From positions 62,001-126,000 of the IMG/VR virus record IMGVR_UViG_3300021964_000012: a stretch of 64,000 nt of DNA. One strand, 5' to 3'. Position numbers and translations under genes: made by a program. The notes beneath the pieces were generated by a model. It was not told the origin of the DNA. It did not search any database and was given only the letters and a program-made list of their open reading frames with translations. Below, piece after piece: positions 13,627-64,000 of the stretch (positions are counted from its first letter, which is position 1; the number at the start of each line of letters is the position of its first letter).

Positions 13627-13654
13627 AATCAATCCTTTACTAATAAAAATACTC

Positions 13655-13803
13655 TTAACAGTAACACAGATAGGTCTGTGGTTCAACTGTTAACTTTACC
13701 TTTATTGTGAATTCGACTAGTGAAATAGAGCTGGGCGTTCTTGTTAAGTAAAGGCGTTAGCCAGGCGTCCGTTGTTGCTCGCGTCTTAGATGGCGCTGTC
13801 GAT
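13655..13803 (-). ncRNA. candidate structured leader/small RNA upstream of tctA
   Basis: GC-richer intergenic segment just downstream of a TAAATA box (13809-13814). Closing stem TCGAC/GTCGA, five RCGCS repeats, then a long hairpin 13655-13693 followed by a U-rich tract. Confidence 0.4.
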
Positions 13804-29549: not shown

Positions 29550-30617
29550 TTAGTTCCCTGGCACTTTAGCATCAATACCTTCAACATAGTACATCATGCT
29601 GTTGAGGTGAGCATCATCAGCAATTTCTCCAGCTTTTAACTGAATCTTTCCTGTGTTGTCTTTGATAGGACCTGTAAATGCAAAGTATTTGCCGGTCTTG
29701 ATACTATCTTTGATCTTTTGTGCAAATGCTTTTACGTCTGCTGGCATGTTTGTGAATGGAGCCATTTGTACTACGTCATCATTCATATGTCCAAAGTAGT
29801 CACCTGATTTCCAGTTACCATCAATTACTGCTTGTACTTTACTAATGTAGTAAGGTGACCAGTTATCGATTGTTGCAGTTAACTGAGCCTTTGGTGCAAA
29901 TTTGTATTGATCACTTGCTTGGCCAAAACCAAGTACACCTGCTTTTTCAGCAGTTTGTAGTGGTGCTGGTGAATCAGTGTGTTGTGCAACCATATCACAA
30001 CCTTCAGCAATCATAACGTCTGCAGCCTGTGCTTCTTTACCTGGATCATACCATGTGTTTACCCATACAATATCAATGTCAATATCTGGATTAACAGTCT
30101 TAGCACCTAGGTAGTAAGTGTTAATTTCACGAATAACTTCAGGTATCGGAAATGCGCCAACATAACAAATTTTATTTGTCTTAGTCATTAATCCAGCAAT
30201 AACACCTTGTACATGTCTTGCTTGATATAATCTTAAACCATAAGTTGCCATGTTTTTACTACGTTTGTAACCAGTAGCATGTTCAAATTTTACATTTGGA
30301 AAATCTTTAGCAACCTTTAGCATAGGCTCCATGTAACCAAAACTTGTTGCAAATATAATATCTGCACCTGATTTTGCCATGGCTCTAATAGCTCTTTCAC
30401 TATCAGGGCCATACTTTACATTTTCCAAATATACTGTTTCCACTTTGTCTCCAAAGTGCTTTTCAACATCTAATCTTCCGATGTCATGTCTGTAGGTCCA
30501 TCCATGGTCACCAATTGGTCCAACATAGATAAAACCTACTTTGATTTTGTCTCCAGCATGTGCAACACTGAAAAACATAACTGACAGTAATACTGCCAAT
30601 AATTTTAGAACGTTCAT
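29550..30617 (-). CDS. BMP-family (purine nucleoside-type) ABC substrate-binding protein
   Basis: Signal peptide; GFIYVGPIGDHGW, TSFGY, EHATGY, TWYDP, QHTDS motifs. Confidence 0.92.
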   Translation of the reverse strand: MNVLKLLAVLLSVMFFSVAHAGDKIKVGFIYVGPIGDHGWTYRHDIGRLDVEKHFGDKVETVYLENVKYGPDSERAIRAMAKSGADIIFATSFGYMEPMLKVAKDFPNVKFEHATGYKRSKNMATYGLRLYQARHVQGVIAGLMTKTNKICYVGAFPIPEVIREINTYYLGAKTVNPDIDIDIVWVNTWYDPGKEAQAADVMIAEGCDMVAQHTDSPAPLQTAEKAGVLGFGQASDQYKFAPKAQLTATIDNWSPYYISKVQAVIDGNWKSGDYFGHMNDDVVQMAPFTNMPADVKAFAQKIKDSIKTGKYFAFTGPIKDNTGKIQLKAGEIADDAHLNSMMYYVEGIDAKVPGN

Positions 30618-51612: not shown

Positions 51613-52312
51613 TGATTGTACTTCTCCAGCGTTCTATCCACTGTTGCTTTAGTTCATTTACTTCAGCGGTTTTGTAGGCACGTTTGGTTGACTTCTTAGT
51701 ACGTGATGTTTCTTGATATATTTCATCGTTGTTGTTGCCAGTAAATTGGAAATGATCATGAAACAGTTTACTTGAGATGCGTTTGTACGCACCAAGGTCA
51801 TAGGTAATATCTTGCACCCATTGATCAACAGGATTAATACCTATCATGTCAAAAGTATCAATCCATAATCGAGGTAAGCAAGGAAACAGTGTACTATCAG
51901 GACGCTTGCCGTTGGACTCCATGCTTATCAGCGAGTTGTAGTCACGATGCTTGTAGATTTCATCATCCCATCCTTGGTCACGCATGTACACATCATCATT
52001 CCATACAAGATACCATTCACTGTCTATGGATCTTGCCATATGATTGTAGTATTCGTGTAAGCCACTCCATCCTGTGCGTTCCATTTTGTGTACTGATTGC
52101 GTTGCACCAGTTTGTTCAACCAGCATTTTCCAGCGATTGCTATTAAAGTAATCGTCGCTTTCAGTATCATCATCGTCATAGGCTACTGCAATATGCAGTC
52201 TCTGGGGATTGTTTGCAAATTCCAACAGGCCTTTCACACTCTTTTCTGCAAGCATGGTACGCATGCGAGTAGGTAACAGAACTGTTAAAAAAGGTTTACT
52301 TAGGTCGTTCAC
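51602..52312 (-). CDS. GT-A (GT2-like) glycosyltransferase
   Basis: LPTRMR, YDDDD, WNDD, HDHFQFTGNNND. GTG start inferred because an upstream small ORF occupies 52296..52460. Confidence 0.7.
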   Translation of the reverse strand: MNDLSKPFLTVLLPTRMRTMLAEKSVKGLLEFANNPQRLHIAVAYDDDDTESDDYFNSNRWKMLVEQTGATQSVHKMERTGWSGLHEYYNHMARSIDSEWYLVWNDDVYMRDQGWDDEIYKHRDYNSLISMESNGKRPDSTLFPCLPRLWIDTFDMIGINPVDQWVQDITYDLGAYKRISSKLFHDHFQFTGNNNDEIYQETSRTKKSTKRAYKTAEVNELKQQWIERWRSTINEN

Positions 52313-52460
52313 ACTTTTCACATCTGCAATGATCACACGCCTTGTAAATATTGTTACCATCTTGTGGATAGCCTTTGTTCTCTTTCCACAATGGTTCACC
52401 ACAATGACTGTAGTGTCCGCAATTTTTACAATTTGTTGGTTGATAGTCTAGTATGCTCAT
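52296..52460 (-). CDS. 54-aa Cys/His-rich metal-binding protein
   Basis: MSILDYQPTNCKNCGHYSHCG...KACDHCRCEKCERPK (hand translation). Confidence 0.65.
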   Translation of the reverse strand: MSILDYQPTNCKNCGHYSHCGEPLWKENKGYPQDGNNIYKACDHCRCEKCERPK

Positions 52461-52464
52461 ACAT

Positions 52465-52704
52465 TTAATTATCTTGGTACATACGACGACGCATTTCTTT
52501 TATACTTTCTGTATGAAAGCATCTAATTAAAGTTTTTTCTATGTTTGGATAGCGTTCAAGCAATTGTTTATTAAGTAACTCGTCATTTGCTTTGCGATAG
52601 GTTTTACATTCATCAAAAGTCGCAAAACGCAGACCAGCATGTATTTTTAAATCAGGGGATGCTGAATTGCTATAGGTCACTAATGCAACTAATAACCAAT
52701 TCAT
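52465..52704 (-). CDS. small secreted hypothetical protein
   Basis: MNWLLVALV...F.TFDEC...C. Confidence 0.6.
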   Translation of the reverse strand: MNWLLVALVTYSNSASPDLKIHAGLRFATFDECKTYRKANDELLNKQLLERYPNIEKTLIRCFHTESIKEMRRRMYQDN

Positions 52705-53087
52705 TTTGTTTTGACGTTTTTAGCCTTACCACGTCTATTTTTGTCTGGGTCTTGTTTACGTTTACGGTTGGCAGCAGTCTTACGACCTTTTTTGCCTAGT
52801 GCGTGTGCTTTCTTTTGTGGTAGACATTTTGGCTTGCCTTCTGACTTACTGCCCCTAGCACAGTCGCCACGTATTTTTCCATCTGGACCAAAACGCACCC
52901 ATTTTTCTTTAAACCATTTTTTTAGATCTTCATCGAGGTTTTCAGCAAATATTAGTTGTCCATCTGCTCCAAGTTGCACATCTTCTTTCTTGACACAGTT
53001 GGGTACACGTTTGCCGAACATGGTCTTCATGCCCTTCTTTTCGTAACCGTCCCAACATTTTTCGCCGAGTATTTCTTCTATAAGCAT
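52701..53087 (-). CDS. probable capsid-internal modular basic protein
   Basis: Start MLIEEILGE; modules KCWDGY...VPNCVK and DLKKWFKEKWV...KPKCLP. Confidence 0.65.
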   Translation of the reverse strand: MLIEEILGEKCWDGYEKKGMKTMFGKRVPNCVKKEDVQLGADGQLIFAENLDEDLKKWFKEKWVRFGPDGKIRGDCARGSKSEGKPKCLPQKKAHALGKKGRKTAANRKRKQDPDKNRRGKAKNVKTK

Positions 53088-53088
53088 A

Positions 53089-53787
53089 TTACTTCTTCTT
53101 TGAATTGCCCCAGTTTGCGGCACCTTTTTTACGGCATTGTACAAGAGCTCCACTTGCGTATGCACTTGGCCATACTTTGTAACGTGACTTTACTTTATGA
53201 TAGCATGCATCTTTTTCGCCAGCAGCTTCATCAAATTGTTCTTCAGTTATTAATGAAGCACTTTCGTTAAGTCCGTCAACTTTGGCTTTCATTTGATTTA
53301 GAAGTAGTTTTAAGCTATCAACTTCTTGTTGCAGTTTAGCAATATCTCTCTGATCTTCGTCGTTGCTTAGGTTTTTCTTTGCTTTGTCCAAAGATAGTAA
53401 TACTGCTTCGAAGTCATTCTTTGCAGTTGGATTGTTTGCTCTAATTAGATTTAGTATGCGTTGTGATCTTTTGTTAGTTGTAGGAAGATCTGAATCAACG
53501 TCTTCGTTTTTCTTGGCTGTTTTTGCCGCATACTTGCGTTTTTCATATTCACTTGGAACATCACTTATGCGTAGATTTTTTAATTTAGGATCAGGCTTGT
53601 ATGTTGCTTTTTCTTCTACATAGTCTTCGTTCTTGGCTTGCTTGGTTGCTACCGCATGCATTACTGATTCAGCATCTTTGCCATAGCGATCAACAAAGTC
53701 ACCTTTTACTTTTTTAAGTTTCTTGAATTTGGCTTCTTTGCTACGCTTTTCGCCACCAGTAAGTTTTCTTTCTTCAATATCAGACAT
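53089..53787 (-). CDS. probable capsid-internal modular protein
   Basis: Basic modules separated by xxE sites; C-terminal KDACYHKVKSRYKVWPSAYASGALVQCRK. Confidence 0.65.
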   Translation of the reverse strand: MSDIEERKLTGGEKRSKEAKFKKLKKVKGDFVDRYGKDAESVMHAVATKQAKNEDYVEEKATYKPDPKLKNLRISDVPSEYEKRKYAAKTAKKNEDVDSDLPTTNKRSQRILNLIRANNPTAKNDFEAVLLSLDKAKKNLSNDEDQRDIAKLQQEVDSLKLLLNQMKAKVDGLNESASLITEEQFDEAAGEKDACYHKVKSRYKVWPSAYASGALVQCRKKGAANWGNSKKK

Positions 53788-53790
53788 TGT

Positions 53791-55347
53791 TTACTTCTTC
53801 ATGCGTGATTTAAATTTGTAATCTTTTACTATCTTACGTATATCGTCTGTGTTTGTTGTACCTTTATTTGCAAACATACCAACAATAGCATCCATGCTTT
53901 TACCATCATCTACTGCTTTATGTATCTTGTTCATTGATAACTTGCCTTCGCCTAAAGGTTTACCAAAAACTTTTCTATATGCGTACTTGCGTGCATCTTC
54001 TGGTGAAAGGCCTTGCTTTTCAAACTTTTTTGTATGCTTGTCTACCATGTGTTGATCATATGCATCGCCAGTTCTTTGCTTGAGCCTTTTTTCGTCTTTG
54101 CTTGGTGTAAACAAGTCAGATATTACACCTTCATTTCTCATAGTGTATGCTGGTGAAGTTTTCTTTAAGGTCTCAACTTCTTGTTGTAGTTTTTTGTAGT
54201 ACTTTGTAGAAATCATATCACGTAGTTTTTGTTGTTCTGGCATAATACTGCCTTGAGCACTGTGCATTCCGTTAATACCACGTATTACCATCGATTCTGG
54301 ACCAGTTCCGTAAAGATTAACAAGCATCTCTGCTACTTCACCGTGTTGGTTTTGATCTTCAAGTTCCATTACTTTGTCATAAAACTTTTTAAGGTCATAA
54401 TCAAATTCACTTGTTGGAATCGCAGCTTCAACCATTTTGAATGTAGCACTGCTAGTGGCCATTTTTATAAAATCTTTAATTTTACCTGCAGGGCCAGACA
54501 CTTTTATACTGTTACTGCCTGCTGGTTTTGCATTAAACTTTATGCCTTTGAAACTTGGACTTCTATGTGCGTTGTTCATTGTTGCTGCAACAGATTGAGG
54601 GTCATCTATGTTTCCAACTATCATGGTTACATTTTTAGAATCAGTCTTCATTTGTCTTGCAGCCAGTGAGCGGTCGCCGAAACTGGATTCCCCAACACCT
54701 TCACGTTGATCATTCATATGATCTCTTGGATCTTCTGGTATTATGCTATAAGCTCTACGTATTGCACCAGACATTTTTGTGTTAGCATTGAACATTGTAG
54801 TTATTTGATCTGTTAAATCACCGTTGTCGAGGTCGGCTAATTTGATAATCTCGTTTTCGAGCATACGTCTTGATTCACTTAATTCTCTTAACTGTGCTTT
54901 AGCTTTGTAAGCACTATAAGGTTTACCCTTCACAGTTGTTTCTGCTTCTTTGACATCAACTTTCACTGTGCCTTCTTTGTCGACCATCTTCTGTCCAAAA
55001 GCCATCATTTTCATAAGGCTGTCTTTTGTTATCTTGATAGGATTTTTATTGTCCTGTGGCATGTCTGGATCAGGAGCATATCTACCTTCACCGTTTACAA
55101 TGTCCAAAAGTTCCTGCATGTTCTTTGCACCAAAAGCAGTACCATATTCTGGTAAGTGTGTTGCTACTCTTGACAGTGCAATTTGTAGATTCTCATCTGA
55201 GGTGGTCTCTGCTTTATCCATTAGTTTAACTGCAATGGCAGCCAGTCTTGCCTGTGCTGGATTGGTTTCATAGTTAGGTTCTGCTTCCTGCACATGCACT
55301 TCGCTAATTTTCATTTTTTCTTCCTCAAATAGATGTAGTAGTCTCAT
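53791..55347 (-). CDS. probable capsid-internal modular protein
   Basis: MRLLHLFE / MKISEVHVQE leaders; repeated VKE, LSE, VGE, MVE, RNE, LGE junctions. Confidence 0.6.
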   Translation of the reverse strand: MRLLHLFEEEKMKISEVHVQEAEPNYETNPAQARLAAIAVKLMDKAETTSDENLQIALSRVATHLPEYGTAFGAKNMQELLDIVNGEGRYAPDPDMPQDNKNPIKITKDSLMKMMAFGQKMVDKEGTVKVDVKEAETTVKGKPYSAYKAKAQLRELSESRRMLENEIIKLADLDNGDLTDQITTMFNANTKMSGAIRRAYSIIPEDPRDHMNDQREGVGESSFGDRSLAARQMKTDSKNVTMIVGNIDDPQSVAATMNNAHRSPSFKGIKFNAKPAGSNSIKVSGPAGKIKDFIKMATSSATFKMVEAAIPTSEFDYDLKKFYDKVMELEDQNQHGEVAEMLVNLYGTGPESMVIRGINGMHSAQGSIMPEQQKLRDMISTKYYKKLQQEVETLKKTSPAYTMRNEGVISDLFTPSKDEKRLKQRTGDAYDQHMVDKHTKKFEKQGLSPEDARKYAYRKVFGKPLGEGKLSMNKIHKAVDDGKSMDAIVGMFANKGTTNTDDIRKIVKDYKFKSRMKK

Positions 55348-56282
55348 TTTTCGCTCGCATAGTCTCTTGATCTTTGTACAAAGGTTTCACATGCCATTAC
55401 TGCATCTTGAAGTTTGCCAAAGGATTTTTTGGATTCTTTTCCGTTTACTTTTACTCTGTAGCCGTCATCTTCTGAACCATATACTTTAAGTTCTTTGCCA
55501 TCGTCTGTGGTAAAAGTCTTAACAGGTTCTGCTAACATTTCTTCGTTTTTCTTTTTTTCAATGTCGCCAAGATAGTCCATGATTGATTTTTTATCGCCGA
55601 TACTATCCTCAGGTAACTCTGCTTTTTTACTAGCAGGGTTAATTGGTCCGCTTAGTGTTTGATCTGTGTCTGGCGAAACGCCGTCCCATGATTCTTCATC
55701 TCCTGGATTTGGTCCTTCGCCTAGTTCCTGCTTCATGTAGTCTCTGGATATATCAAGATAGTCAAGTGCTTTGATAATTTTACCTTGCACCCATTCTGGC
55801 AAGTTTTCATCATCGTCTAAGATGCCTTGTAGTTCTAGTGCTGCATCTGCTGCTCGTGCAAGTTGATCTTTGGCCATTGCACCTTCTTCGTCATACTCAC
55901 CTTTGTCCTTGATATCTACTTCTTCTGCATCGTTTGCATAGGCAGAAATATCAATTGTTTCTGCGTCTTCACCAACAAGATATCCTTTAGTCGGGTTTTT
56001 CTCTTTGTTGCTTCCTACAACTGGACTTACTTCTGGCATCTTGTAATCAGCCGGAAGTTGCTTTGGCTTATAGCCTTTTTCAAATTCTTTAGTGCTGACA
56101 GTCTTAGCACTTTCAAATGGAATGTCACGGTATAGGTTTTCTAGAATGCTGGTCATATCATTGGCCTTCATACCTTCTTTGATATGATTGACCTTTGATT
56201 TAAATTGACGCTCATGAGGCTTTCTGGCTTCATCAATTTGATTAAGTTTACTTACTAGGTTTGCAAAACTGTTATCGTCCAT
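55344..56282 (-). CDS. probable head/scaffold-associated protein
   Basis: EYDEEGAMAKDQL...DDENLPEWVQGKI...DYL module; Glu-site junctions. Confidence 0.6.
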   Translation of the reverse strand: MDDNSFANLVSKLNQIDEARKPHERQFKSKVNHIKEGMKANDMTSILENLYRDIPFESAKTVSTKEFEKGYKPKQLPADYKMPEVSPVVGSNKEKNPTKGYLVGEDAETIDISAYANDAEEVDIKDKGEYDEEGAMAKDQLARAADAALELQGILDDDENLPEWVQGKIIKALDYLDISRDYMKQELGEGPNPGDEESWDGVSPDTDQTLSGPINPASKKAELPEDSIGDKKSIMDYLGDIEKKKNEEMLAEPVKTFTTDDGKELKVYGSEDDGYRVKVNGKESKKSFGKLQDAVMACETFVQRSRDYASEK

Positions 56283-56725
56283 TACTCTCTACTCTCTTTT
56301 AAAAAACTTTTTAACATCCATCCATGTTTAGCATGAGCGTCTAATCGCTCAGCAATAAAATTTTCTATTCCTCTATTCTTTTCTGCACCTGCAGATTGAA
56401 ACGATTGTTCTAGTATGCTTTCTAACGCACGATTATCATCAAGTAGTTCTTGCATCATGATTGATGCTCTTGGCACTTTTGTCTGTCCTTGTATTACACT
56501 TAGTTCAGAGAATCTTTCAAACGATCCTGGAGTGTAAGTATCTAATGTTCTGATATATTCTGCGATCTGATCAATGGCATTTTCATTTAATTCTTCATAT
56601 AGATTAGCAAAAAATTCGTGATACTGTGCAAAGTTTGATCCTTCAACATTCCAATGAAAGTATTGAGCTTTTATTGCGAAAGCATAGGTGCTTGCCAACA
56701 GTGTCTTTAAATCGTCAGATAACAT
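56282..56725 (-). CDS. dps: Dps-family DNA-protecting ferritin
   Basis: HWNVEG.NF...HEFF..LYEE...D.IAE.IR...H.K..WML; ATAAATA at 56747-56753. Confidence 0.92.
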   Translation of the reverse strand: MLSDDLKTLLASTYAFAIKAQYFHWNVEGSNFAQYHEFFANLYEELNENAIDQIAEYIRTLDTYTPGSFERFSELSVIQGQTKVPRASIMMQELLDDNRALESILEQSFQSAGAEKNRGIENFIAERLDAHAKHGWMLKSFLKESRE

Positions 56726-56776
56726 TTTTAATTCCTTTATTAAGAGTATTTATCTGAAAGAAACAATAAGGGGTTG

Positions 56777-57295
56777 TTAAATGAGATTGAAATATCGATA
56801 GTTAGGGCTTAGTCTCTGACTGTTAACAACTTTTGCCCAACCTTCTACAGGATATGCACATGTCAAGTCTTTGCAAATATAACATTCAATACCGAGACTG
56901 CTCATGTTTTTATATCCTGTGCGGCGATTGATTATGCACTCTTGTTCATGAAAACCACAGTAGATAATATTTGTAAGGTTGTAATGTTTAAGGTACTTTT
57001 CAACTACAAAAGGTCCAGCTTTGTTTGGATAATGCTGAACGTAGGGTAGATTTTGTAATACGTCTGGTGATTTGTCAATCTCGGTTGTAACCACCAGAGG
57101 ATATTTCATGTTTGGGAGATACTCGATTATCTTTCTCATGTAGACACTGTTCCAAGAATTTAGTTCTCCAGGTCCAAGGTTTTCTGGCACCCAAAATGGA
57201 AATAATTCTTCTTGGTTTTCCCAAGGATCCATGATTATCCAAATAGAATTTTCGTTCAGTTCTGCAATTTGTACTTTGGAAAGTTTAACAAACAT
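56777..57295 (-). CDS. isochorismatase/cysteine-hydrolase-like protein
   Basis: IIMDPW (catalytic Asp) and IIYCGFHEQECII (catalytic Cys), DLT. Confidence 0.55.
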   Translation of the reverse strand: MFVKLSKVQIAELNENSIWIIMDPWENQEELFPFWVPENLGPGELNSWNSVYMRKIIEYLPNMKYPLVVTTEIDKSPDVLQNLPYVQHYPNKAGPFVVEKYLKHYNLTNIIYCGFHEQECIINRRTGYKNMSSLGIECYICKDLTCAYPVEGWAKVVNSQRLSPNYRYFNLI

Positions 57296-57297
57296 TG

Positions 57298-57465
57298 CTA
57301 AGATTTTTTTGGTTTGTACTTTGTTGGATTAGGTGTGTTACCATAAGCACGTGGTCCTACACGTTTTATGGGTTGAGCAAATAGATTGGATTGCACAACT
57401 GCAACGTTACTTGCACTGGTTGTTGATGCGTCAGCATTTTCTTGTATGATGTCTTTGATTTTCAT
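57298..57465 (-). CDS. 55-aa probable capsid-internal protein
   Basis: MKIKDIIQE-NADASTTSASNVAVV...KYKPKKS (hand translation). Confidence 0.6.
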   Translation of the reverse strand: MKIKDIIQENADASTTSASNVAVVQSNLFAQPIKRVGPRAYGNTPNPTKYKPKKS

Positions 57466-57654
57466 TTACTTGCCCTCTGTAAAACTAAGCATGCCTTCAT
57501 AGAAACTGTTGTTAGTGTCTGTAGGAAGATCTTGTGGATTAACAATATTACGAGCCTTGGCCCAAGCATAGCCAGCCATATGTCCTGAGCAGTCTTTGGT
57601 ACAAGGATAGCCTTTGTACATTAATCCTTCTTTTAAGATTTCTTCTGCTTTCAT
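57466..57654 (-). CDS. small probable capsid-internal protein
   Basis: MKAEEILKE-GLMYKGYPCTKDCSGHMAGYAWA. Confidence 0.65.
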   Translation of the reverse strand: MKAEEILKEGLMYKGYPCTKDCSGHMAGYAWAKARNIVNPQDLPTDTNNSFYEGMLSFTEGK

Positions 57655-57851
57655 TTTTTCTTCTTACCCGACTTCATGTTTGCACACCAGTGATACATCT
57701 TTGCACGTTCACCAGATGCTTTCTTTGCTTTTGCACGCAAGTCAGTTACACTTCCTTTGCAACTAGCACCTGCACGTTTTACTCTACCTGGTCGGCTTTT
57801 CCCCTTTACTTTGCCATCTGCAAAGTTTTCTACTATTTCAAAGGCTCGCAT
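57651..57851 (-). CDS. small basic probable capsid-internal protein
   Basis: MRAFEIVE-NFADGK...CKGSV...HWCANMKSGKKKK. Confidence 0.65.
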   Translation of the reverse strand: MRAFEIVENFADGKVKGKSRPGRVKRAGASCKGSVTDLRAKAKKASGERAKMYHWCANMKSGKKKK

Positions 57852-58134
57852 TTTCTTTTACTATACGAAAGGTTGAATTATCAACGATCTCAGCTGATCC
57901 GTAACTACATCTTAGTTTTCTTGTTTTAAATTCACCACCATGATTTTCAATGCGTACAGTGTATTCACCTGGTTCTGCTGAAATTTGCAGTATTTCTGTC
58001 ACGTATTCGATCGGATACCAAGTGTAGTTGCGTTCATTGAACAGTTCATCGTTGACGTAGATTCTATACATCGGTGGTTTGTTTTGCCATTTAGCAAAAA
58101 CATCTAGTTCCATTTTAACAAATTGTTTTTCCAT
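57838..58134 (-). CDS. hypothetical beta-sandwich protein
   Basis: PMYRIYVNDELFNER.Y.W...PGEY.VRIE. Confidence 0.65.
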   Translation of the reverse strand: MEKQFVKMELDVFAKWQNKPPMYRIYVNDELFNERNYTWYPIEYVTEILQISAEPGEYTVRIENHGGEFKTRKLRCSYGSAEIVDNSTFRIVKENASL

Positions 58135-60728
58135 TATAGAACCGCTATCTCTGTTGCAGTGTAATCAGGTGTAAATTGACTGTTAATCTGGAAAAAATAC
58201 TGTGCCTGTTTCATTATCTCATCTCTTGCTTCATCTCTATTGGCGGCTTTTATTGTTCCATCATAGGTTTGATATCTACTATCCCCGGTGTAAGGTATTC
58301 TATATGAAAACTTTTTTAAGTCTGCCTTGTCTGGTTCAGGAAGATCAATCTCTACTTTTAGTGTGTTGAAATCTGGTGTATCAGTTTTCTTCTGTGGATG
58401 CTCAAACACGTTTAAGGCATCTTGTATTGCTGCCTGCGTGGCAGTTTGAGCACTGGATGCGTTTACCTTACGTTCCATTGTTTTTTCTGTACCATCTGCT
58501 GTAGTGTACTGCATAGTATACTTCCACGGCTTTACTGGGCCACCAAGATCCTTTTGCAACTGCTTTGCTTTTGCCAAACGTTTATCATCCGGCCGGCCAT
58601 CAAGTTTGTTTAGTATTGCTTGATTCTGTTTTTGTTGTACAACAAGATTGGCCCAACGCTTTTTAAATACTTCTTTGTTGATATCACCTGATTGAAAGTC
58701 AGCAAACAGACTGTCAATTGTGCGAGCACTGCTTTCGCTTTTGCTCAGTGTTTTGTACAGTTTCTTTTGATACTCTTGTCTGTATGCTTGTGGATCAGCG
58801 GCTATGGTCATTGCTCTTGCAAATCTCAACATAGTATCCATTACTTCATCTACTTCTTGAGCAGTGTACTGTCCGCCTGGTCCTCTAAACTCAATGTAAC
58901 CGTCCTTGATATGTATACTGGTGTATTTTGCTTGTCCAGTACCAGCACGCACATATTCTTCAGCTGCATCTTCCAAGTTGTCTTTCATTTTCTGCATTGC
59001 TTGTGCGGCTTTTTCAGGTGGTAACTGAGCTGCACGAGCTTCCAACTGTCCTAATGCACTGGCTGCATAGTTGTTACTGAGACGCCCGTACTTGCCAAGA
59101 ATGTACTTGTCACCTGAGAATAGCACAAGTTTTGTATAGTCAATGTCGTTGCCCTGTGGTACACTTATATTCATGTGTAGGCCAGTGCTTTGATTTGTAT
59201 AGATGTCTCCATCTTTATCTTCAATATAAGCAAATAGTTTTTCCAGTTGATCAAGTGCTTCATCAAGAGGCATTACCGGTGATACCAGTTCCCAACCAGC
59301 ATCAGGCCCTTCGTCAGCAGTCAAACTGCTGTCTGGTTCAAGAGTATACTTGCCTTCTTCTTTATCACTGCCATGGTACTGATCACTAACGTTTGTGCCT
59401 TTGCCGGTTATCTCACTTATGTCCTGAGCCCAGGAGTCTATTGATATTCCACCACCGCCTTCGGTAAAGTATGGCCACACTAGGTCGTACTTGTTGAGCA
59501 GATCACTCATGGCTTCAATGCCTTCGTGTTCCCAAAACTGATTCCATGTTACACTACCATGTATTTCTTCTTGTACTTCTTCTTGGACTTCTGTCCAGAT
59601 GTTGCCTTGCTCTTCAACTTCCTGGTTCAAGAAGTCTTCTTGTTCATCTTCGTCCATTGATTCAAAGTTTTCATCGCCTTTTAACTTATCTCGTACCAAG
59701 GTGTATTCTTCGTCCATCATTTTTTCTGCTACGAGCATTGATTCGTATTCCATAAGGTCGTCGATGACTACCTCACGAAATCGTTCAGCTTCAATTGGTT
59801 GTAGATTAAGCCATGCATCTTCGTAGCCATAAAACGTACTAATATCATCCAACGTGCCAATTGGCTCATCATAGTCCATGTCTGCTTCATCACCATATTC
59901 ATCTGTTTCACGTTGTGTGTCTACAAATATAAGTTCTAATTCAAATCCTGCACGCACACCTTGAGCTAGTTCACTTTTTGCCCAACTGCGTAATGCACTG
60001 CTTGACATATCTACTTCAAGTAAGTCTTCTTCTTTGATTGCTTGATAACGTTCCATTAGGCTTTCGGCTAATGTTTTTTTCTTACGTTTTTTACCTGGCT
60101 TGGTTTTGTTCACCAGATCCATATTGAGATTCAAGCCAAGTTTTTCTATGTTGCGTTGGTCCTCACCTGGACGTACATCCACAGTGAGTGCAGTTTTGAA
60201 TCTTGGATCGTTTGCTTGTGCGGCAGTTGGAATGTAACCAGATGCTTCGTTTACTTTTTTCTTCTTGCCTGCACAGTGAGCTTTTTGTGAAAAGCCTTTT
60301 GGATTTGAACAGTCAATACTGTCCTTGTATTTTTGACTCCAACCTTCTTCAACTTGCTCTTTTACTTCGTCTGAATATTCAATATCTTCTGCTCCAACTA
60401 TAACTGCTGGTAAGGTTTCTAAGCCTGCTTTACGAGCCGCATGCATTCTATGATGTCCGTCTAAGACTTGATAGCCTTTTGGATCTTTGCGTACCACAAT
60501 TGGCTTTCCTCCCCAAGTGCCAGTTTTCATCTTGAGTGCCATTTTTAGCACAGAATTTTTGTGATGTATGTCATCCATCTTACTAGACGGTTCATAGCCA
60601 AACAGACTCTTCACTGGCACAGGTTTGCTAGGACGTTGCTGATAACTGTCAGGTACATCTGCACCAAAGTACGCAGGATCTGTGTACAGTGTGATTAATT
60701 CTCGATTTTCAAACCAGGTTGCTTTCAT
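58134..60728 (-). CDS. multidomain protein: ParB-like domain, small basic modules and putative amidoligase (COOH-NH2 ligase type 2)
   Basis: VLDGHHR; GWSQKYKDSIDCSNPKGFSQKAHC; GFELE, EPDSSL, ELVSP, TGLHMNIS, KYTSI, IEFRGPGG. Confidence 0.75.
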   Translation of the reverse strand: MKATWFENRELITLYTDPAYFGADVPDSYQQRPSKPVPVKSLFGYEPSSKMDDIHHKNSVLKMALKMKTGTWGGKPIVVRKDPKGYQVLDGHHRMHAARKAGLETLPAVIVGAEDIEYSDEVKEQVEEGWSQKYKDSIDCSNPKGFSQKAHCAGKKKKVNEASGYIPTAAQANDPRFKTALTVDVRPGEDQRNIEKLGLNLNMDLVNKTKPGKKRKKKTLAESLMERYQAIKEEDLLEVDMSSSALRSWAKSELAQGVRAGFELELIFVDTQRETDEYGDEADMDYDEPIGTLDDISTFYGYEDAWLNLQPIEAERFREVVIDDLMEYESMLVAEKMMDEEYTLVRDKLKGDENFESMDEDEQEDFLNQEVEEQGNIWTEVQEEVQEEIHGSVTWNQFWEHEGIEAMSDLLNKYDLVWPYFTEGGGGISIDSWAQDISEITGKGTNVSDQYHGSDKEEGKYTLEPDSSLTADEGPDAGWELVSPVMPLDEALDQLEKLFAYIEDKDGDIYTNQSTGLHMNISVPQGNDIDYTKLVLFSGDKYILGKYGRLSNNYAASALGQLEARAAQLPPEKAAQAMQKMKDNLEDAAEEYVRAGTGQAKYTSIHIKDGYIEFRGPGGQYTAQEVDEVMDTMLRFARAMTIAADPQAYRQEYQKKLYKTLSKSESSARTIDSLFADFQSGDINKEVFKKRWANLVVQQKQNQAILNKLDGRPDDKRLAKAKQLQKDLGGPVKPWKYTMQYTTADGTEKTMERKVNASSAQTATQAAIQDALNVFEHPQKKTDTPDFNTLKVEIDLPEPDKADLKKFSYRIPYTGDSRYQTYDGTIKAANRDEARDEIMKQAQYFFQINSQFTPDYTATEIAVL

Positions 60729-60748
60729 AACAACGTATTTATCGCAAG

Positions 60749-61687
60749 TTAACTTGCTTTCTTTTTCTTGCGTTTGCTAGTGGTTTTGGCAAGCACTTTT
60801 GCACTGCGTCTTTCTGGAGGAAGTTCTGCTTGTTGTTTTGGAATTCCTGCTTCAATTTTTCCTTGATCAGGATCTATAACCAATGGTGCACGATCTTTGA
60901 GTTCGGCATGCAAGGCTTTGTAAGTAGCATCTTGACCAACATGATCGTATGTGTAGGTACCAGTATGTTTCAGTAACACACGTTTGTCAATCCAAACTTG
61001 TCCACCTAGATCTCTCCAGTTTTCACAAAAGGTCCAATCTTCTGAATAGTAACGACCTTCTCTAACATCTGTGTCAAAGAATGTACGCATGTCTTTGTTA
61101 AGTGCAGGGTCTAATCCTATGTCATTGGTAAAAGGAATAGTTGCAGGATGATCAACTAATTTTGCAAACACATGTCTTTTGATCAACATAAAACCTGTAC
61201 CAGTTTTGCTAACTTCTTGTAGCCTACCTAAATCTTCAGTAGCACCACCTTCAATGCCGTTCACGCACCATTTAACTGGCAAACCTTTTAGAGGATACAT
61301 ACCACCAATCACATCTTTGTCATGATGTAATAGCAGTAACAGATGCCACGGTTCCCAACCGATATCGCTATCAATAAACATTAGGTGTGTGCTTTCTGGA
61401 TTGCTTAAAAACTTTGCAACCATGGTATTTCTTGCACGTGATATTAAACTTTCGTTTGTGAGTGTTTCTACAGTATAGTCAATGCCTAACTGTCTAGCAG
61501 TATTTGACCAACGTATAAAACTCATAAAAGTTGATTCTGTTAACATACCTCCATAACAAGGCATACATATATGTACTTTTGTTTTTTTAAGTTTTTCAAT
61601 ATCAACCTGTACTTTGTTTGGATCAGCAACATCCACTTGTGTGTTTTCTGTAACAATTTCGTCAGTGGTTTTCATTTCCTCAGCCAT
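60749..61687 (-). CDS. GT-A fold glycosyltransferase
   Basis: PCYGG, ESLISRARN, FIDSDI (DxD), GTGFMLIKR, SEDWTFC, HTG. Confidence 0.75.
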   Translation of the reverse strand: MAEEMKTTDEIVTENTQVDVADPNKVQVDIEKLKKTKVHICMPCYGGMLTESTFMSFIRWSNTARQLGIDYTVETLTNESLISRARNTMVAKFLSNPESTHLMFIDSDIGWEPWHLLLLLHHDKDVIGGMYPLKGLPVKWCVNGIEGGATEDLGRLQEVSKTGTGFMLIKRHVFAKLVDHPATIPFTNDIGLDPALNKDMRTFFDTDVREGRYYSEDWTFCENWRDLGGQVWIDKRVLLKHTGTYTYDHVGQDATYKALHAELKDRAPLVIDPDQGKIEAGIPKQQAELPPERRSAKVLAKTTSKRKKKKAS

Positions 61688-61747
61688 TGGTCCCTCATAG
61701 GTAATAGTTATATAGGTATTTAATGATTTAGTGCTAGTGGTGGTAAT

Positions 61748-62812
61748 TTATTTGATATCGTTGCTGAGTTCATCTTCTGGCAAGTAATCTTCATTGCTTA
61801 TGTCAATTTCAACTTCTTTTTTAATTGGACGGTTACCACGTTTGTTTTTAAAACTTTGATATTGTCTAAGTGCTGATACCAGTGATTCCATAGCACCTGA
61901 TTTGTAAATTACATATTCAAGGTTATCATAGTTCTCATCTTCCAGCATGTCTGAAAGTGTACGCAATTTGTCCGCCAGGTTGCTTTTAATTGATTGTTCA
62001 CTGTGTGATCCCATACCACCTGCTGGTAGTATGCTTACTTCATTGTCTTTTTGTATTATACGTGTTTCTTTTACTTTATGCTCTGAATCTTTCATTAGTT
62101 CACCGTCAGGCATTACATGATAGCCTTTTGGAATTGGCTTACACTTTTGACTCTGTCTACAGTAGTATTCTCCCAGACCGCACTTTTTATCTTCTTCAAT
62201 TGATCCCATTGGTATTGAAACTGGTTGTTTGTTGCCTAGCACAGTGTTGAATATTTCAATAGCCTTGTTGATCATTGGCTTTGAATTCATTGGGTATAGA
62301 TTAACAATGAGATCTTCTTTTTCATCGTCGCTCATGGTTGGCCATTTGCCACGTATTTCAGTAGCACTGGTCATGCCTGGTCCAAACTGCACTGTAGGTA
62401 AGTAGGTCATGAACCCATGTTGTTTCATGTTTTCTGGCTTGTTTCGTTTTAATGGTTGTAAGTAACTTGCACTACCGTCTTTTTTAAAGCCACCTGGTAA
62501 GGGTGCCACACCACTGTCCTTGTCACTACGTATGAATATTAATTGCGTTGTTTCTGGATCATACAAATCTGTGATCTCTCGTGGCTGGAAAGGTGATTTA
62601 ACTTGCACAAATCTATGTGCAGGAATACCTGCTATCCCAGCAAGTGTTTTCTTTAGTTTGAACGGAAATGGTCTTGAGCTTTTGTCATCTGTGGCGGCAA
62701 TAAACACATCAGCCTTAGGAAACTGTGCAACAGCCGCATCATACAATGCCTTATGTCCTGCATGGAACGGATGAAATCCTCCTGGTATAATAACTAATTT
62801 TTTTAATGCCAT
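61748..62812 (-). CDS. HxGH nucleotidyltransferase (cytidylyltransferase-like) with C-terminal modules
   Basis: PGGFHPFHAGH, SATEIR; then Cys module KKCGLGEYYCRQSQKCKP after an IEE site. Confidence 0.75.
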   Translation of the reverse strand: MALKKLVIIPGGFHPFHAGHKALYDAAVAQFPKADVFIAATDDKSSRPFPFKLKKTLAGIAGIPAHRFVQVKSPFQPREITDLYDPETTQLIFIRSDKDSGVAPLPGGFKKDGSASYLQPLKRNKPENMKQHGFMTYLPTVQFGPGMTSATEIRGKWPTMSDDEKEDLIVNLYPMNSKPMINKAIEIFNTVLGNKQPVSIPMGSIEEDKKCGLGEYYCRQSQKCKPIPKGYHVMPDGELMKDSEHKVKETRIIQKDNEVSILPAGGMGSHSEQSIKSNLADKLRTLSDMLEDENYDNLEYVIYKSGAMESLVSALRQYQSFKNKRGNRPIKKEVEIDISNEDYLPEDELSNDIK

Positions 62813-63416: not shown

Positions 63417-64000
63417 CTATTCTTGTGTTTCATTGACAGTTACAATACCATTTGTGTCTATGTAAGCATCACTGGGTGAGCCTTTAGGTTTAACATCAAG
63501 TGTTATTCTTGGACGTTTGCCTTTGAACCATACATCAGCAGTTACATGAACATTTTCCAGTTTTTCAAAAAGTATCTTTTTACTTAACGGCACTTTGATA
63601 ATTTCGTCAATCTTTCTGCCCAATGGTCTTGCACCCATTTTAGGATCATATCCAACGTCAACAAGATATTCTACCATTGCTTCTGTTACAATAATATTAA
63701 TATTTTTTTGTTTTAGGTTTGCTCTGAGTTCGTTGATAAACTTTGCAACAATTTTTTTGATTGCAAATGGTTCTAGTGTTTTGAACTTGACTATCAGATC
63801 TAATCTGTTGCGTAGTTCTGGCTTGAAAAAATCTTTTACTGCTTTGTCTTCACTGCCAGTACGTACAAGTTCTTGACCAAATCCAATATTGTTGTTTTCG
63901 TTGTCTCTAGCACCAAGATTTGATGTTAGTATAATAATACAGTTTTTTACATCAACAGTTTTGCCATTTGATCCTGTGATCTTACCTTCGTCCATCATTT
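63417..64000 (-). CDS. ClpA/ClpB-family AAA+ ATPase, C-terminal part
   Basis: DEGKIT, IILTSNLGA, FKPELRNRLD, GYDPKMGARPL; 5' part lies outside the window. Confidence 0.9.
   Translation of the reverse strand, partial: MMDEGKITGSNGKTVDVKNCIIILTSNLGARDNENNNIGFGQELVRTGSEDKAVKDFFKPELRNRLDLIVKFKTLEPFAIKKIVAKFINELRANLKQKNINIIVTEAMVEYLVDVGYDPKMGARPLGRKIDEIIKVPLSKKILFEKLENVHVTADVWFKGKRPRITLDVKPKGSPSDAYIDTNGIVTVNETQE

What the first reader, a model, noticed from the sequence alone, without database searches (positions are those of the whole stretch)
52701..62812. Array of probable capsid-internal polyproteins with Glu-terminated leaders and shuffled basic/Cys mini-modules
Seen: consecutive ORFs start with similar 8-10-aa leaders ending in Glu (MLIEEILGE, MRLLHLFE, MKISEVHVQE, MKIKDIIQE, MKAEEILKE, MRAFEIVE). 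Larger ORFs are strings of 25-70-aa Lys-rich, often two-Cys modules beginning right after [ILV]-x-E or EE sites (E-KCWDGY..NCVK, E-DLKKWFKEKW, E-AAGEKDACYHK, E-GWSQKYKDSIDC, E-DKKCGLGEYYC, E-NFADGK). Such modules are also grafted onto enzymes (amidoligase, nucleotidyltransferase). Known: T4 internal proteins have a ~10-aa capsid-targeting leader removed by prohead protease gp21 after Glu. Inference: a cassette-style cargo system releasing many small peptides inside the head for DNA condensation or injection as anti-defence effectors.
Basis: partly seen in the sequence, partly recalled or inferred. Interest (0 to 1): 0.75.

Follow-up and report, generated by a model that had tools for sequence, protein, structure and literature searches.

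The report
Protease-tagged capsid cargo modules, marine phage
A 328-kb marine T4-like phage carries genes for small basic proteins and module strings that start with a T4-style capsid-targeting tag and a protease cut site, and the same kit recurs in thousands of ocean phage proteins, some found by others inside cyanophage particles.

Summary

**Genome context.** The window lies in a 328,292-bp T4-like phage. The genome encodes a gp23-type capsid protein and a gp21-type (Peptidase_S77) prohead protease.

**Leaders.** Five or six genes at 52.7-61.7 kb start with 8-10-residue leaders ending in [ILV]-x-Glu. These resemble T4 IPII/IPIII (MKTYQEFIAE). In 83 related loci, over 100 unrelated proteins share one 9-residue tag, M-[RK]-[AI]-x-[ED]-[FIL]-[ILV]-x-E.

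**Modules.** Each small module (A to D and F) is preceded by [LIVFM]-x-E at a fixed offset in 89/93, 110/115, 66/66, 43/43 and 173/173 (Glu) distinct contexts. Background is 0.025 per position. The modules occur in nearly every order, in proteins of 126-1395 aa.

**Virion evidence.** Homologous polyproteins (T4-GC119, S-SCSM1 gp029) were detected by mass spectrometry in cyanophage virions.

**Best reading.** This is T4-type internal-head cargo, processed by the prohead protease. Cleavage, packaging and function are inferred, not shown.

**Function.** Module F is 91% conserved where neighbouring genes are 26-55%. That argues for a conserved target such as DNA rather than fast-evolving anti-defence.

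**Limits.** Only two window ORFs (o128, o232) are true module strings.

**Verdict.** New variant of a known kind. I found no published description.

The parts
52701..53087 (-). o128: 9-aa leader MLIEEILGE (53061-53087), module A KCWDGY..PNCVKKE (52983-53060), linker with NLDE site, module B DLKKWFKEKW.. to the C-terminus (52704-52928)
   Evidence: Modules A and B are those of the cyanophage T4-GC119 proteins. Module B gives a weak DUF5872 match. AlphaFold predicts the leader and the 37-46 linker as disordered and module A as a beta hairpin.
53089..53787 (-). o232: short N-terminal MSDIEE, module J (..RYGKDAESVMHAVATKQAK.., 53626-53700), coiled linker, FDE site, module C AAGEKDACYHKVKSRYKVWPSAYASG.. 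(53092-53226)
   Evidence: Matches phrog_727, phrog_38880 and phrog_3477. Module C follows [LIVFM]-x-E in 66/66 contexts.
53791..55314 (-). o507: large basic protein with leader MKISEVHVQE (55285-55314). An alternative upstream ATG at 55347 gives MRLLHLFE. No known domain, no shuffled module.
   Evidence: Homologues were found only in the closest relatives.
55344..56282 (-). o312: acidic protein (pI 4.6) without a 9-aa leader, syntenic with the array in 30 related loci. Role unknown.
56282..56725 (-). Dps/ferritin-like protein embedded in the array, syntenic with module F in 27 loci
   Evidence: Pfam Ferritin E 3e-19 and phrog_3636. Synteny.
57298..57465 (-). o55: leader MKIKDIIQE plus 46-aa basic peptide. 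Its start (57352-57438) copies the N-terminus of the mature capsid protein.
   Evidence: Alignment to the phage's own MCP residues 40-75.
57466..57654 (-). o62: leader MKAEEILKE plus module G (GLMYKGYPCTKDCSGH.., 57547-57627)
   Evidence: Homologues with the same leader type in 9 loci.
57651..57851 (-). o66: leader MRAFEIVE (57828-57851) plus module F NFADGK..MYHWCANMKSGKKKK (57654-57827), pI 10.8
   Evidence: 842 clusters at 80-97% identity. At least 572 IMG/VR loci. Glu precedes the module in 173/173 contexts. Predicted three-helix core with a disordered leader.
57838..58134 (-). o98: conserved small protein between the amidoligase gene and module F (23 loci). Function unknown.
58134..60728 (-). 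o864: ParB_N (60381-60506), VEE site plus module D GWSQKYKDSIDCSNPKGFSQKAHC.. (60246-60344), Amidoligase_2 (58830-59450), C-terminal region
   Evidence: Pfam and PHROG hits. Module D follows [LIVFM]-x-E in 43/43 contexts. In relatives the amidoligase lies in 940-2082-aa multidomain proteins.
60749..61687 (-). Glycosyltransferase-like protein (phrog_1574) with a leader-like MKTTDEIVTE at residues 5-14 (61646-61675). Membership in the system is doubtful.
   Evidence: The N-terminal 23 residues are not conserved in more distant homologues.
61748..62812 (-). o354: cytidylyltransferase-like nucleotidyltransferase (62672-62791), IEE site plus module E DKKCGLGEYYC..KPIPKGY.. (62087-62191), C-terminal tail
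   Evidence: Module E recurs on its own in Prochlorococcus phage proteins, Bellamy gp123 and S-SCSM1 gp029.

Best explanation
This region is an internal-head-protein (capsid cargo) locus of a jumbo T4-like phage.

**Proposed mechanism.**
1. The small proteins are made with an 8-10-residue N-terminal tag (M-[KR]-x-x-[ED]-[IF]-[ILV]-x-E) that works like the T4 capsid-targeting sequence. It brings the protein into the scaffolding core of the prohead.
2. The phage's gp21-type serine protease then cuts after the Glu of [LIVFM]-x-E.
3. The same three-residue site precedes every small module (A-D, F, G, H, I). This holds whether the module follows a start leader, another module or an enzyme domain. 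Multi-module proteins are therefore cut into separate 30-75-residue peptides, most of them very basic (about pI 10-11), often with two Cys. These peptides stay with the DNA in the head.
4. Enzymes carrying a module or a leader (ParB-amidoligase, nucleotidyltransferase) are co-packaged cargo, in the manner of injected polyvalent proteins.
5. The conserved basic peptides most likely bind and help condense the 328-kb genome and enter the cell with it. A minority of cargo proteins may act on the host.

**Shown.**
- the sequences;
- the protease and capsid genes;
- the shared tag;
- the fixed site before each module;
- the shuffling of modules;
- virion detection of homologues in two cyanophages.

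**Inferred.** Targeting, cleavage, retention in the head, ejection and DNA binding.
For: **Phage type.**
- gp23-type MCP and Peptidase_S77 are in the same genome.
- S77 is present in 3/3 near-complete and 4/7 partial related genomes carrying module F.
- It is also present beside the module in smaller T4-like contigs.

**Leaders.**
- T4 IPII/IPIII begin MKTYQEFIAE. The published gp21 motif is L/I-X-E, and the first 10 residues suffice for capsid targeting.
- The window leaders share E-[IF]-[ILV]-x-E with that sequence.
- In 83 related loci, 113 distinct proteins share the tag, and 107 tags are exactly 9 residues. These include a nucleotidyltransferase, a P-loop/zeta-like protein, a GNAT, a peptidoglycan-binding protein and a triple-HTH protein.
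- The tag is found at 127/3417 first Met against 14/5274 internal Met.

**Site before modules.**
- The site is at a fixed offset before A 89/93, B 110/115, C 66/66 and D 43/43.
- For F, P1 is Glu in 173/173 contexts. P3 is hydrophobic in 160/173, while P2 varies.
- Stand-alone (leader) and fused copies of a module have the site at the same offset. Both would therefore yield the same mature peptide.
- Bacterial stand-alone copies of module A lack the site, so it is not needed for the fold.
- The phage's own MCP has L-N-E just before the conserved mature N-terminus.

**Virions.**
- Homologous polyproteins carrying the same sites were detected in S-SM1 and S-SCSM1 virions.
- Cytidylyltransferase/NMNAT-like proteins are repeatedly found in cyanophage virions.

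**Structure and composition.**
- AlphaFold puts the leaders and the A-B linker in disordered segments.
- No conserved DNA flanks the leaders, so the constraint is on the peptide.
Against: - There is no direct evidence of cleavage or packaging for this uncultured phage.
- Published virion data show presence of homologues, not neo-N-termini.
- Syn9 gp114, a homologue, was annotated but not detected in Syn9 virions (Table S8).
- The locus lies among replication and metabolic genes, not in the head-gene cluster. No TATAAATA late-promoter motif lies in it. T4 IP genes are likewise scattered.
- The motif [LIVFM]-x-E is short. It could be an integral N-terminal element of the modules.
- o864 and o354 have no N-terminal leader.
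- This genome and a 355-kb relative each have only about 5-7 leader-bearing genes.
- The protease-substrate complex prediction gave no answer.
Confidence: 0.65

Rival explanations
1. The proteins are capsid cargo, but only the N-terminal leader is removed. Multi-module proteins stay in one piece. On this view the [LIVFM]-x-E in front of internal modules is a relic of repeated gene fusion between leader-bearing mini-genes, not a site that is used.
For: - Some fusions keep a whole internal leader, Met included. An example is ..KTMREEFADFLE before module F in L044 and P0095.
- T4 IPIII contains further L/I-x-E triplets yet is described as losing only its propeptide.
- In the o128 model, the site before module B lies at the start of a predicted helix of modest confidence.
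Against: - A relic would decay. Instead the site is kept in 308/317 distinct contexts for modules A-D, while P2 and everything upstream vary freely.
- Most fusion contexts show no trace of the rest of a leader.
- The T4 core proteins gp22 and gp67 are cut at many such sites.
Confidence: 0.15
2. The proteins are not virion cargo. The modules are small nucleic-acid- or metal-binding domains of cytoplasmic phage proteins. The hydrophobic-x-Glu is the first structural element of each module. The similar N-termini reflect a common translation-start or helix-capping preference.
For: - Module A exists as a free 34-55-aa protein in Bacteroidota genomes, so it has a function of its own.
- The locus sits among replication and metabolic genes.
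- Modules B and H are catalogued only as DUF5872 and DUF6321.
- The extreme conservation of module F fits any conserved binding partner.
Against: - At least eight sequence-unrelated modules would all need the same three-residue start.
- The bacterial copies of module A lack that start.
- The tag has a fixed length of 9 residues and is predicted disordered.
- Homologous polyproteins were found in CsCl-purified virions of two phages.
- The carriers examined are T4-like phages with the matching protease.
Confidence: 0.12
3. The leader-plus-core peptides are substrates of the co-conserved amidoligase. This could work like a RiPP system or like Pup: peptides ending in Glu, or their Lys-rich cores, would be ligated to other molecules by the glutamine-synthetase-like ligase encoded two genes upstream.
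For: - The order Amidoligase_2 gene, o98, module F is conserved. In some relatives the ligase and module F are in one polypeptide.
- The architecture is a short leader followed by a Cys-containing core.
- Glycosyltransferases and radical-SAM genes are nearby.
Against: - The cores are long and 84-100% conserved, not hypervariable.
- The same tag heads enzymes of up to 800 aa.
- The modules occur in cyanophage polyproteins that have no amidoligase nearby.
- No leader-recognition domain was found.
Confidence: 0.05

Closest known systems
Phage T4 internal proteins IPI, IPII, IPIII with their capsid-targeting sequence, processed by prohead protease gp21
   Same: - Short N-terminal propeptide ending in L/I-x-Glu. 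T4 has MKTYQEFIAE; here MKAEEILKE, MKIKDIIQE and MRAFEIVE, and MRAxEFIxE in relatives.
- Small, mostly basic mature proteins.
- A gp21-family protease and a gp23-family capsid protein in the same genome.
- Genes scattered outside the head cluster and variable between related phages.
   Different: - The mature parts have no detectable similarity to the T4 IPs (no Pfam or PHROG link).
- Cargo here is built from a shared set of mini-modules that also occur in tandem and on enzymes.
- One tag serves over 100 different proteins across the clade.
- Processing and packaging are untested.
Cyanophage T4-GC119 'structural protein' (Syn9 gp114, S-P4 AYR01841, Bellamy gp123, S-SCSM1 gp029)
   Same: - True homologues of modules A, B, C and E. 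Parts match at the nucleotide level, 68-80% over about 240 nt in 170 cyanophage records.
- The same hydrophobic-x-Glu precedes each module.
- Detected in virions of S-SM1 and S-SCSM1.
   Different: - In cyanophages there is one 440-620-aa protein between the terminase genes g16 and g17.
- Here the modules are split over two short genes plus separate leader-bearing mini-genes, in another genome region, in a phage nearly twice as large.
- I found no published description of the cyanophage protein as a protease-cut polyprotein.
T4 prohead core proteins gp22, gp67 and gp68, which gp21 cuts into several peptides
   Same: One precursor is cut at several L/I-x-E sites into small peptides, some of which stay in the head (and Table 1 of PMC9026906).
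   Different: Those are scaffold components, largely acidic, and mostly expelled. The modules here are basic, Cys-containing and independently folded, and they are shuffled between proteins.
Polyvalent proteins of phages and conjugative elements (Iyer et al. 2017, PMC5512222)
   Same: - Multidomain proteins thought to be packaged and injected with the DNA.
- They combine ParB-like, nucleotidyltransferase, GNAT, kinase and peptidoglycan-targeting domains.
- Such domains occur here and in relatives: ParB_N + Amidoligase_2; NTP_transf_2 + Amidoligase_2 + module F; GNAT, SLT, LysM; and an LPD23 domain in one module-bearing protein.
   Different: Polyvalent proteins are described with MuF or zincin-peptidase anchors and self-processing. 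Here the delivery logic is a T4-type tag plus prohead-protease sites, and the recurring units are tiny basic modules.
Pfam DUF5872 and DUF6321
   Same: Module B gives a weak DUF5872 match. The family is above threshold in 8 of 68 related proteins. Module H of the cyanophage and metagenome relatives is DUF6321.
   Different: Both are families of unknown function with no statement about processing or location. Modules A, C, D, E, F and G have no Pfam family.

Membership tests
T4-type capsid-targeted internal head proteins | Encoded by a phage with a gp21-family (Peptidase_S77) prohead protease and a gp23-family major capsid protein | tested here: met
   PF03420 at E 5e-30 (genome 304454-305080) and PF07068 at E 4.5e-100 (genome 302140-303342).
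T4-type capsid-targeted internal head proteins | N-terminal propeptide of about 10 residues ending in L/I-x-Glu and resembling MKTYQEFIAE | tested here: met
   The T4 sequences were read from NC_000866. The clade consensus is M-[RK]-[AI]-x-[ED]-[FIL]-[ILV]-x-E. The same pattern finds IPII and IPIII as the only hits in 15 kb of T4.
T4-type capsid-targeted internal head proteins | Propeptide removed by the prohead protease inside the prohead | not testable with these tools
   This needs N-terminal sequencing or mass spectrometry of virion proteins. The complex prediction of protease plus o66 gave no answer.
T4-type capsid-targeted internal head proteins | Mature protein present in the virion and ejected with the DNA | not testable with these tools
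   The phage is uncultured. The only support is indirect: homologous polyproteins in S-SM1 and S-SCSM1 virions.
T4-type capsid-targeted internal head proteins | Mature part homologous to IPI, IPII or IPIII | tested here: not met
   No Pfam or PHROG family shared with the T4 IPs. The region therefore works like the T4 IPs but is not a member of their sequence families.
Cyanophage T4-GC119 virion protein | Contains the modules KCWxGY..NCV, WFxxKW..C..C and DACYxKVK..WPSAYASG | tested here: met
   tblastn to 208 phage records. Translations of Syn9 gp114, S-P4, Bellamy gp123 and S-SCSM1 gp029.
Cyanophage T4-GC119 virion protein | Single gene in the g16-g17 (terminase) interval | tested here: not met
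   Here there are two adjacent genes about 8 kb from the DNA polymerase gene, among metabolic and glycosyltransferase genes.
Polyvalent proteins (Iyer et al. 2017) | Two or more unrelated effector-type domains in one polypeptide of a phage | tested here: met
   o864 is ParB_N + module D + Amidoligase_2. The relative L035:319-6567 is NTP_transf_2 + Amidoligase_2 + module F.
Polyvalent proteins (Iyer et al. 2017) | Linkage to MuF, zincin-like peptidase or LPD domains that mark the class | tested here: not met
   None in the window proteins. One LPD23 domain was found in a metagenomic module-bearing protein.
RiPP precursor peptides | Conserved leader with a variable core, next to a leader-recognising modifying enzyme | tested here: not met
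   The cores are more conserved than any neighbouring gene (module F median 91%). The same leader heads large enzymes. No recognition domain was found.

The most novel reading that the evidence does not exclude
Marine T4-like phages, including abundant cyanophages, may share a common alphabet of protease-released, protamine-like peptides. These would be delivered from polyproteins and mini-genes by one universal 9-residue capsid tag.

In the strongest form of this reading, the co-conserved and possibly co-packaged glutamine-synthetase-like amidoligase joins the Glu C-termini created by the protease to Lys residues of the basic peptides. This would resemble Pup ligation and would build a covalently linked protein-DNA core inside the head.

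A side branch concerns the o55 family, which copies the N-arm of the mature capsid protein. It may dock cargo onto the inner capsid wall.
Probability: 0.07. Interest if true: 0.9.

Novelty: new variant of a known kind. Interest (0 to 1): 0.72.

Why it matters
The T4 capsid-targeting tag and gp21 processing are textbook facts, but they are known only from coliphages and from a handful of internal proteins. Here the same logic appears in uncultured 330-355-kb marine T4-like phages and in cultured cyanomyoviruses.

- **A testable identity for known proteins.** The cyanophage 'structural proteins' detected in virions and left unexplained since 2010 get a concrete identity: polyproteins cut into basic peptides.
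- **A way to find cargo.** The simple sequence rule (tag, or hydrophobic-x-Glu plus module) flags likely capsid cargo in metagenomes. Candidates include enzymes and a DNA-binding regulator that may be injected.
- **An unstudied conserved peptide.** Module F is 84-100% identical across phages whose other genes have drifted to 26-55%. Hundreds of clusters carry it, and I found nothing published on it.
- **Biological and practical reach.** If confirmed, the finding bears on how very large genomes are condensed in T4-type heads and on what ocean phages deliver into cells at infection. The 9-residue tag could also serve as a tool for loading proteins into marine phage capsids.

Tried and rejected
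- **Loose leader pattern.** M, 3-8 residues, [ILVMF]-x-E is not enriched: 50 seen, 42.6 expected. I dropped it for a tighter pattern with controls.
- **Within-genome duplication of modules.** None found; each module is single-copy.
- **tblastn of o66 and o62 against 50,697 phage records.** No match. The low-complexity filter may mask these Lys-rich queries, so this is not evidence of absence.
- **ESM Atlas look-up of o507.** No usable lead.
- **Foldseek of the module F model against the PDB.** No match better than E 4.
- **PDB sequence searches of o128, o232 and the F profile.** Nothing found.
- **Protease plus o66 complex prediction.** No answer; it counts neither for nor against.
- **T4 late promoter TATAAATA.** Absent from the region, and only 2 in the window. 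Expression timing remains open.
- **DNA-level mobile cassette as the cause of the shared leaders.** Rejected. There is no nucleotide conservation upstream or downstream of the leaders.
- **RiPP reading.** Rejected on core conservation and on the same leaders heading large enzymes.
- **o354 as the orthologue of the virion cytidylyltransferase T4-GC190.** Not supported. Only weak superfamily-level matches were found.
- **Bacterial genomes.** Only 3 loci in 185,579 species genomes. Two lie on contigs of one MAG; the one inspected (L112) carries phage-type leader-bearing polyproteins. The third led to the bacterial stand-alone module A family.

Full report
**Where the window lies.** The window is bases 62001-126000 of a 328,292-bp IMG/VR virus record with direct terminal repeats. 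The genome is about 37% G+C, and most of its genes are on the minus strand. It encodes a gp23-family major capsid protein (PF07068, E 4.5e-100) and, two genes away, a gp21-family prohead protease (Peptidase_S77, E 5e-30). It is therefore a jumbo T4-like phage. Elsewhere the window carries a family-B DNA polymerase, a 5'-3' exonuclease, SHMT, an asparagine-synthase-like gene, a TctA transporter, a Bmp-type binding protein, two radical-SAM genes, glycosyltransferases, two tRNAs and the end of a ClpB-like ATPase.

**The observation.**
- MLIEEILGE starts one base after the stop of the upstream gene. It is the likely true start of the 52701-53087 ORF, rather than the upstream GTG.
- MRLLHLFE and MKISEVHVQE lie in one ORF. 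The second follows a GAGGAAG ribosome-binding site.
- Every module occurs once in the genome.
- Pfam sees ParB_N and Amidoligase_2 on either side of module D. It sees a cytidylyltransferase-like domain before module E and a ferritin/Dps protein in the middle of the block.
- PHROGs places different parts of o128 and o232 in nine and three different families, at different profile positions. This was a first sign of shuffling.

**Comparison with T4.** Read from the T4 record, IPII and IPIII begin MKTYQEFIAE and IPI begins MKTFKEF...ITE. A review of T4 head assembly makes three relevant points:
- the first 10 residues of IPIII suffice for capsid targeting;
- gp21 cuts after Glu in L/I-X-E;
- propeptides range from 7 residues (Alt) to 65 residues (gp23).

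The window leaders MKAEEILKE, MKIKDIIQE, MLIEEILGE and MRAFEIVE share the E/D-[IF]-[ILV]-x-E core.

**Module F leads to the wider system.**
- o66 has 842 relatives at 80-97% identity in metagenome protein clusters. At least 572 IMG/VR loci carry it.
- In 79 of 79 fetched loci the module is directly preceded by Glu.
- About a third are stand-alone genes with a 9-residue leader, typically MRAxEFIxE. The rest are C-terminal fusions to unrelated proteins.
- Over 173 distinct upstream contexts, P1 is Glu in all. P3 is L/I/V/F/M in 80/81 leader contexts and in 80/92 fusion contexts, against a 19% background. P2 varies.

**The leader is a shared tag.**
- A pattern modelled on the leaders finds 113 distinct proteins in 83 loci. 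Of these, 107 have a tag of exactly 9 residues although 8-11 were allowed.
- The consensus is M-[RK]-[AI]-x-[ED]-[FIL]-[ILV]-x-E.
- The mature parts are unrelated to each other. They include modules A, B, C, D, G and H, a nucleotidyltransferase, a zeta-toxin-like P-loop protein, a GNAT, peptidoglycan-binding proteins, a triple helix-turn-helix protein and many unknowns of 50-800 aa.
- Controls: 127/3417 first-Met starts, all on the gene strand, against 14/5274 internal Met. In 15 kb of T4 the pattern returns only IPII and IPIII.
- No nucleotide conservation flanks the leaders, so a DNA cassette does not explain them.
- This genome and a complete 355-kb relative each have only about 5-7 such genes. 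Other relatives pack five or six into 12 kb.

**The modules are shuffled and each carries the site.**
- phmmer of o128 against 1.84 billion representatives gives 2282 clusters at E <= 0.001, 357 of them at E <= 1e-30.
- In the best 150 proteins (126-1395 aa), module B sits at the N-terminus, the middle or the C-terminus.
- Module orders include B, BC, BAC, ACBD, AB, ACB, DACB, BACD, BCA, DAB and BDAC.
- [LIVFM]-x-E lies at a fixed offset before A in 89/93, B in 110/115, C in 66/66 and D in 43/43 distinct contexts, against 0.025 per position background.
- Leader-bearing and fused copies have the same offset. Cutting after Glu would therefore give the same mature peptide from either.
- Stand-alone bacterial copies of module A (34-55 aa; Adhaeribacter, Pedobacter) are preceded by KKD rather than by this site. 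The site is thus not part of the fold.
- Long module-bearing proteins also carry DUF5872, DUF6321, GNAT, SLT, LysM, CTP_transf_like and one LPD23 domain.

**Link to the protease.** Peptidase_S77 is present in all three near-complete related genomes (355, 349 and 332 kb) and in four of seven partial ones. In a smaller T4-like contig, module F lies a few genes from the terminase, the T4-type portal and S77. The phage's own capsid protein has L-N-E immediately before the segment that aligns with the conserved start of mature T4 gp23.

**Evidence from virions.** Modules A, B, C, E and H make up the cyanophage protein family T4-GC119: Syn9 gp114, an S-P4 'structural protein', Bellamy gp123 and S-SCSM1 gp029.
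- Table S8 of Sullivan et al. 2010 lists T4-GC119 as detected in S-SM1 virions with 13 peptides. It was not detected in Syn9.
- S-SCSM1 gp029 is one of 45 proteins found by mass spectrometry in CsCl-purified virions. That paper also notes repeated detection of NMNAT/cytidylyltransferase-like proteins in cyanophage virions.
- Sullivan et al. likewise report a virion cytidylyltransferase, T4-GC190.
- The virion-detected S-SCSM1 gp029 has the same sites before modules A and H (LFNE|DCWDGY, QVSE|GAAW); the Syn9 and Bellamy homologues show them too, e.g. QFQE|KCWQGY.
- Bellamy gp122 is MKSFKQFQE followed by module D.

**Structure and conservation.**
- AlphaFold with a 54-sequence alignment gives module F a three-helix core (pLDDT about 88) and a disordered leader. 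It has no PDB fold match.
- For o128, the leader and the 37-46 linker are disordered. Module A is a beta hairpin and module B is a helix-plus-sheet unit, with mean pLDDT 66.
- Module F is 84-100% identical to the window copy (median 91%) in loci where Dps is 55%, o98 40%, the amidoligase 34% and o312 26%. The loci were chosen by similarity to F, which inflates its figure. The contrast with neighbours in the same loci nevertheless stands.

**Interpretation.** The simplest account is a T4-type capsid-cargo system. A short tag targets proteins to the prohead core. The S77 protease cuts after Glu at the tag and at the same site before each module. The basic peptides remain with the DNA.
- The conservation of F, B and D argues for a conserved partner, most simply DNA.
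The variable leader-bearing enzymes and unknowns could still be host-directed.
- The ParB-amidoligase and nucleotidyltransferase proteins resemble the injected polyvalent proteins of Iyer et al. 2017. In relatives the amidoligase sits in 940-2082-aa proteins, one of which ends in module F.

**What is not shown.** There is no direct evidence of cleavage, packaging, ejection or DNA binding. The locus is not in the head-gene cluster and has no TATAAATA motif. o864 and o354 lack a leader. The complex prediction was uninformative. The three rival readings are leader-only processing, non-virion domain proteins, and ligase substrates. I rate them at 0.15, 0.12 and 0.05.

**Novelty.** Full-text searches turned up no description of a capsid-targeting tag, protease-cut polyproteins or these modules in cyanophages or marine T4-like phages. 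T4-GC119 is mentioned only as a hypothetical or structural protein. The principle is known from T4. The modular polyprotein form, the universal 9-residue tag and the ocean-wide spread are new. I file this as a new variant of a known kind.

Noticed in passing
window 57298-57465 (o55), compared with genome 302140-303342 (L003:1432-2634): After its leader, o55 and its family ([NS]ATAGATSSGNIATV..) align with the phage's own major capsid protein residues 40-75. The alignment starts exactly at the predicted maturation site HLNE|NATAGSTASGNIAT. Pairwise E is 7e-4 for o55 and 2e-5 for the L043 member. This is a small protein that copies the N-arm of the mature capsid protein. It may dock on the inner capsid wall or share protease recognition.
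   Followed up: partly
L114:7965-8081 (Adhaeribacter aerolatus), P0271-P0286: Module A (PCWxGY..KKVPNCV) exists as a free 34-55-aa basic protein on long bacterial contigs of Bacteroidota (Adhaeribacter, Pedobacter). It has neither the leader nor the hydrophobic-x-Glu site there. Its cellular function is unknown.
   Followed up: partly
window 57654-57827 and loci L010-L089: Module F is 84-100% identical (median 91%) across loci whose Dps, o98, amidoligase and o312 genes are only 55, 40, 34 and 26% identical. This is an unusually constrained 58-residue peptide with hundreds of clusters and no annotation.
   Followed up: partly
L035:319-6567 and L035:6564-10693: In a relative, one 2082-aa protein combines NTP_transf_2, Amidoligase_2 and a C-terminal module F. 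Three of the next four genes begin with the 9-residue tag. One of these is a protein with three helix-turn-helix domains, a possible injected regulator. The fourth gene, without a detected tag, carries a GNAT domain.
   Followed up: partly
window 52296-52460: A 54-aa Cys/His-rich ORF (CKNCGHYSHCG...CDHCRCEKC) lies just downstream of the array. It resembles a leader-bearing ORF in L078 (MKPLELLKE + WIVKCLNCGCDSHCG...). Here it has no leader.
   Followed up: no
window 56282-56725: A Dps/ferritin-like gene sits inside the array and is syntenic with module F in 27 related loci. A DNA-binding, iron-storing protein conserved next to putative DNA-condensing cargo may belong to the same function.
   Followed up: no
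genome 305102-306010, 306122-306337, 266324-266695, 269355-270008 (outside the window): Two proteins encoded just beside the prohead protease gene (genome 305102-306010 and 306122-306337) start MNKFEQLIE and MKLFEFYD. Two further genes elsewhere start MRSYEFITE and MKSFAQYLVE. These are more candidates for the same tag in this genome.
   Followed up: no
window 52981-53220: This is the only part of the 7.9-kb query (52701-60600) with nucleotide-level matches to cultured phages. It matches at 68-80% identity over about 240 nt in 170 cyanomyovirus records. It spans the end of module C, the leader and module A, which suggests recent exchange of these modules with cyanophages.
   Followed up: partly
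window 1-50000: Auxiliary metabolic genes unusual for a phage: serine hydroxymethyltransferase (6758-7897), an asparagine-synthase-like gene (5243-6757), a TctA tricarboxylate transporter subunit (12217-13686), a Bmp/PnrA-type substrate-binding protein (29550-30617) and two radical-SAM genes. tRNA-Trp and tRNA-Arg lie at 1184-1340.
   Followed up: no
window 63417-63998: The C-terminal part of a ClpB/ClpA-type AAA+ ATPase (AAA_2 and ClpB_D2-small domains) runs off the window end, directly upstream of the array.
   Followed up: no
whole window: The T4 late-promoter octamer TATAAATA occurs only twice (14311, 31414) where 6.4 are expected. It occurs 13 times in the genome, several of them just upstream of genes, including a 1103-aa gene (genome 273458-276769).
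   Followed up: partly
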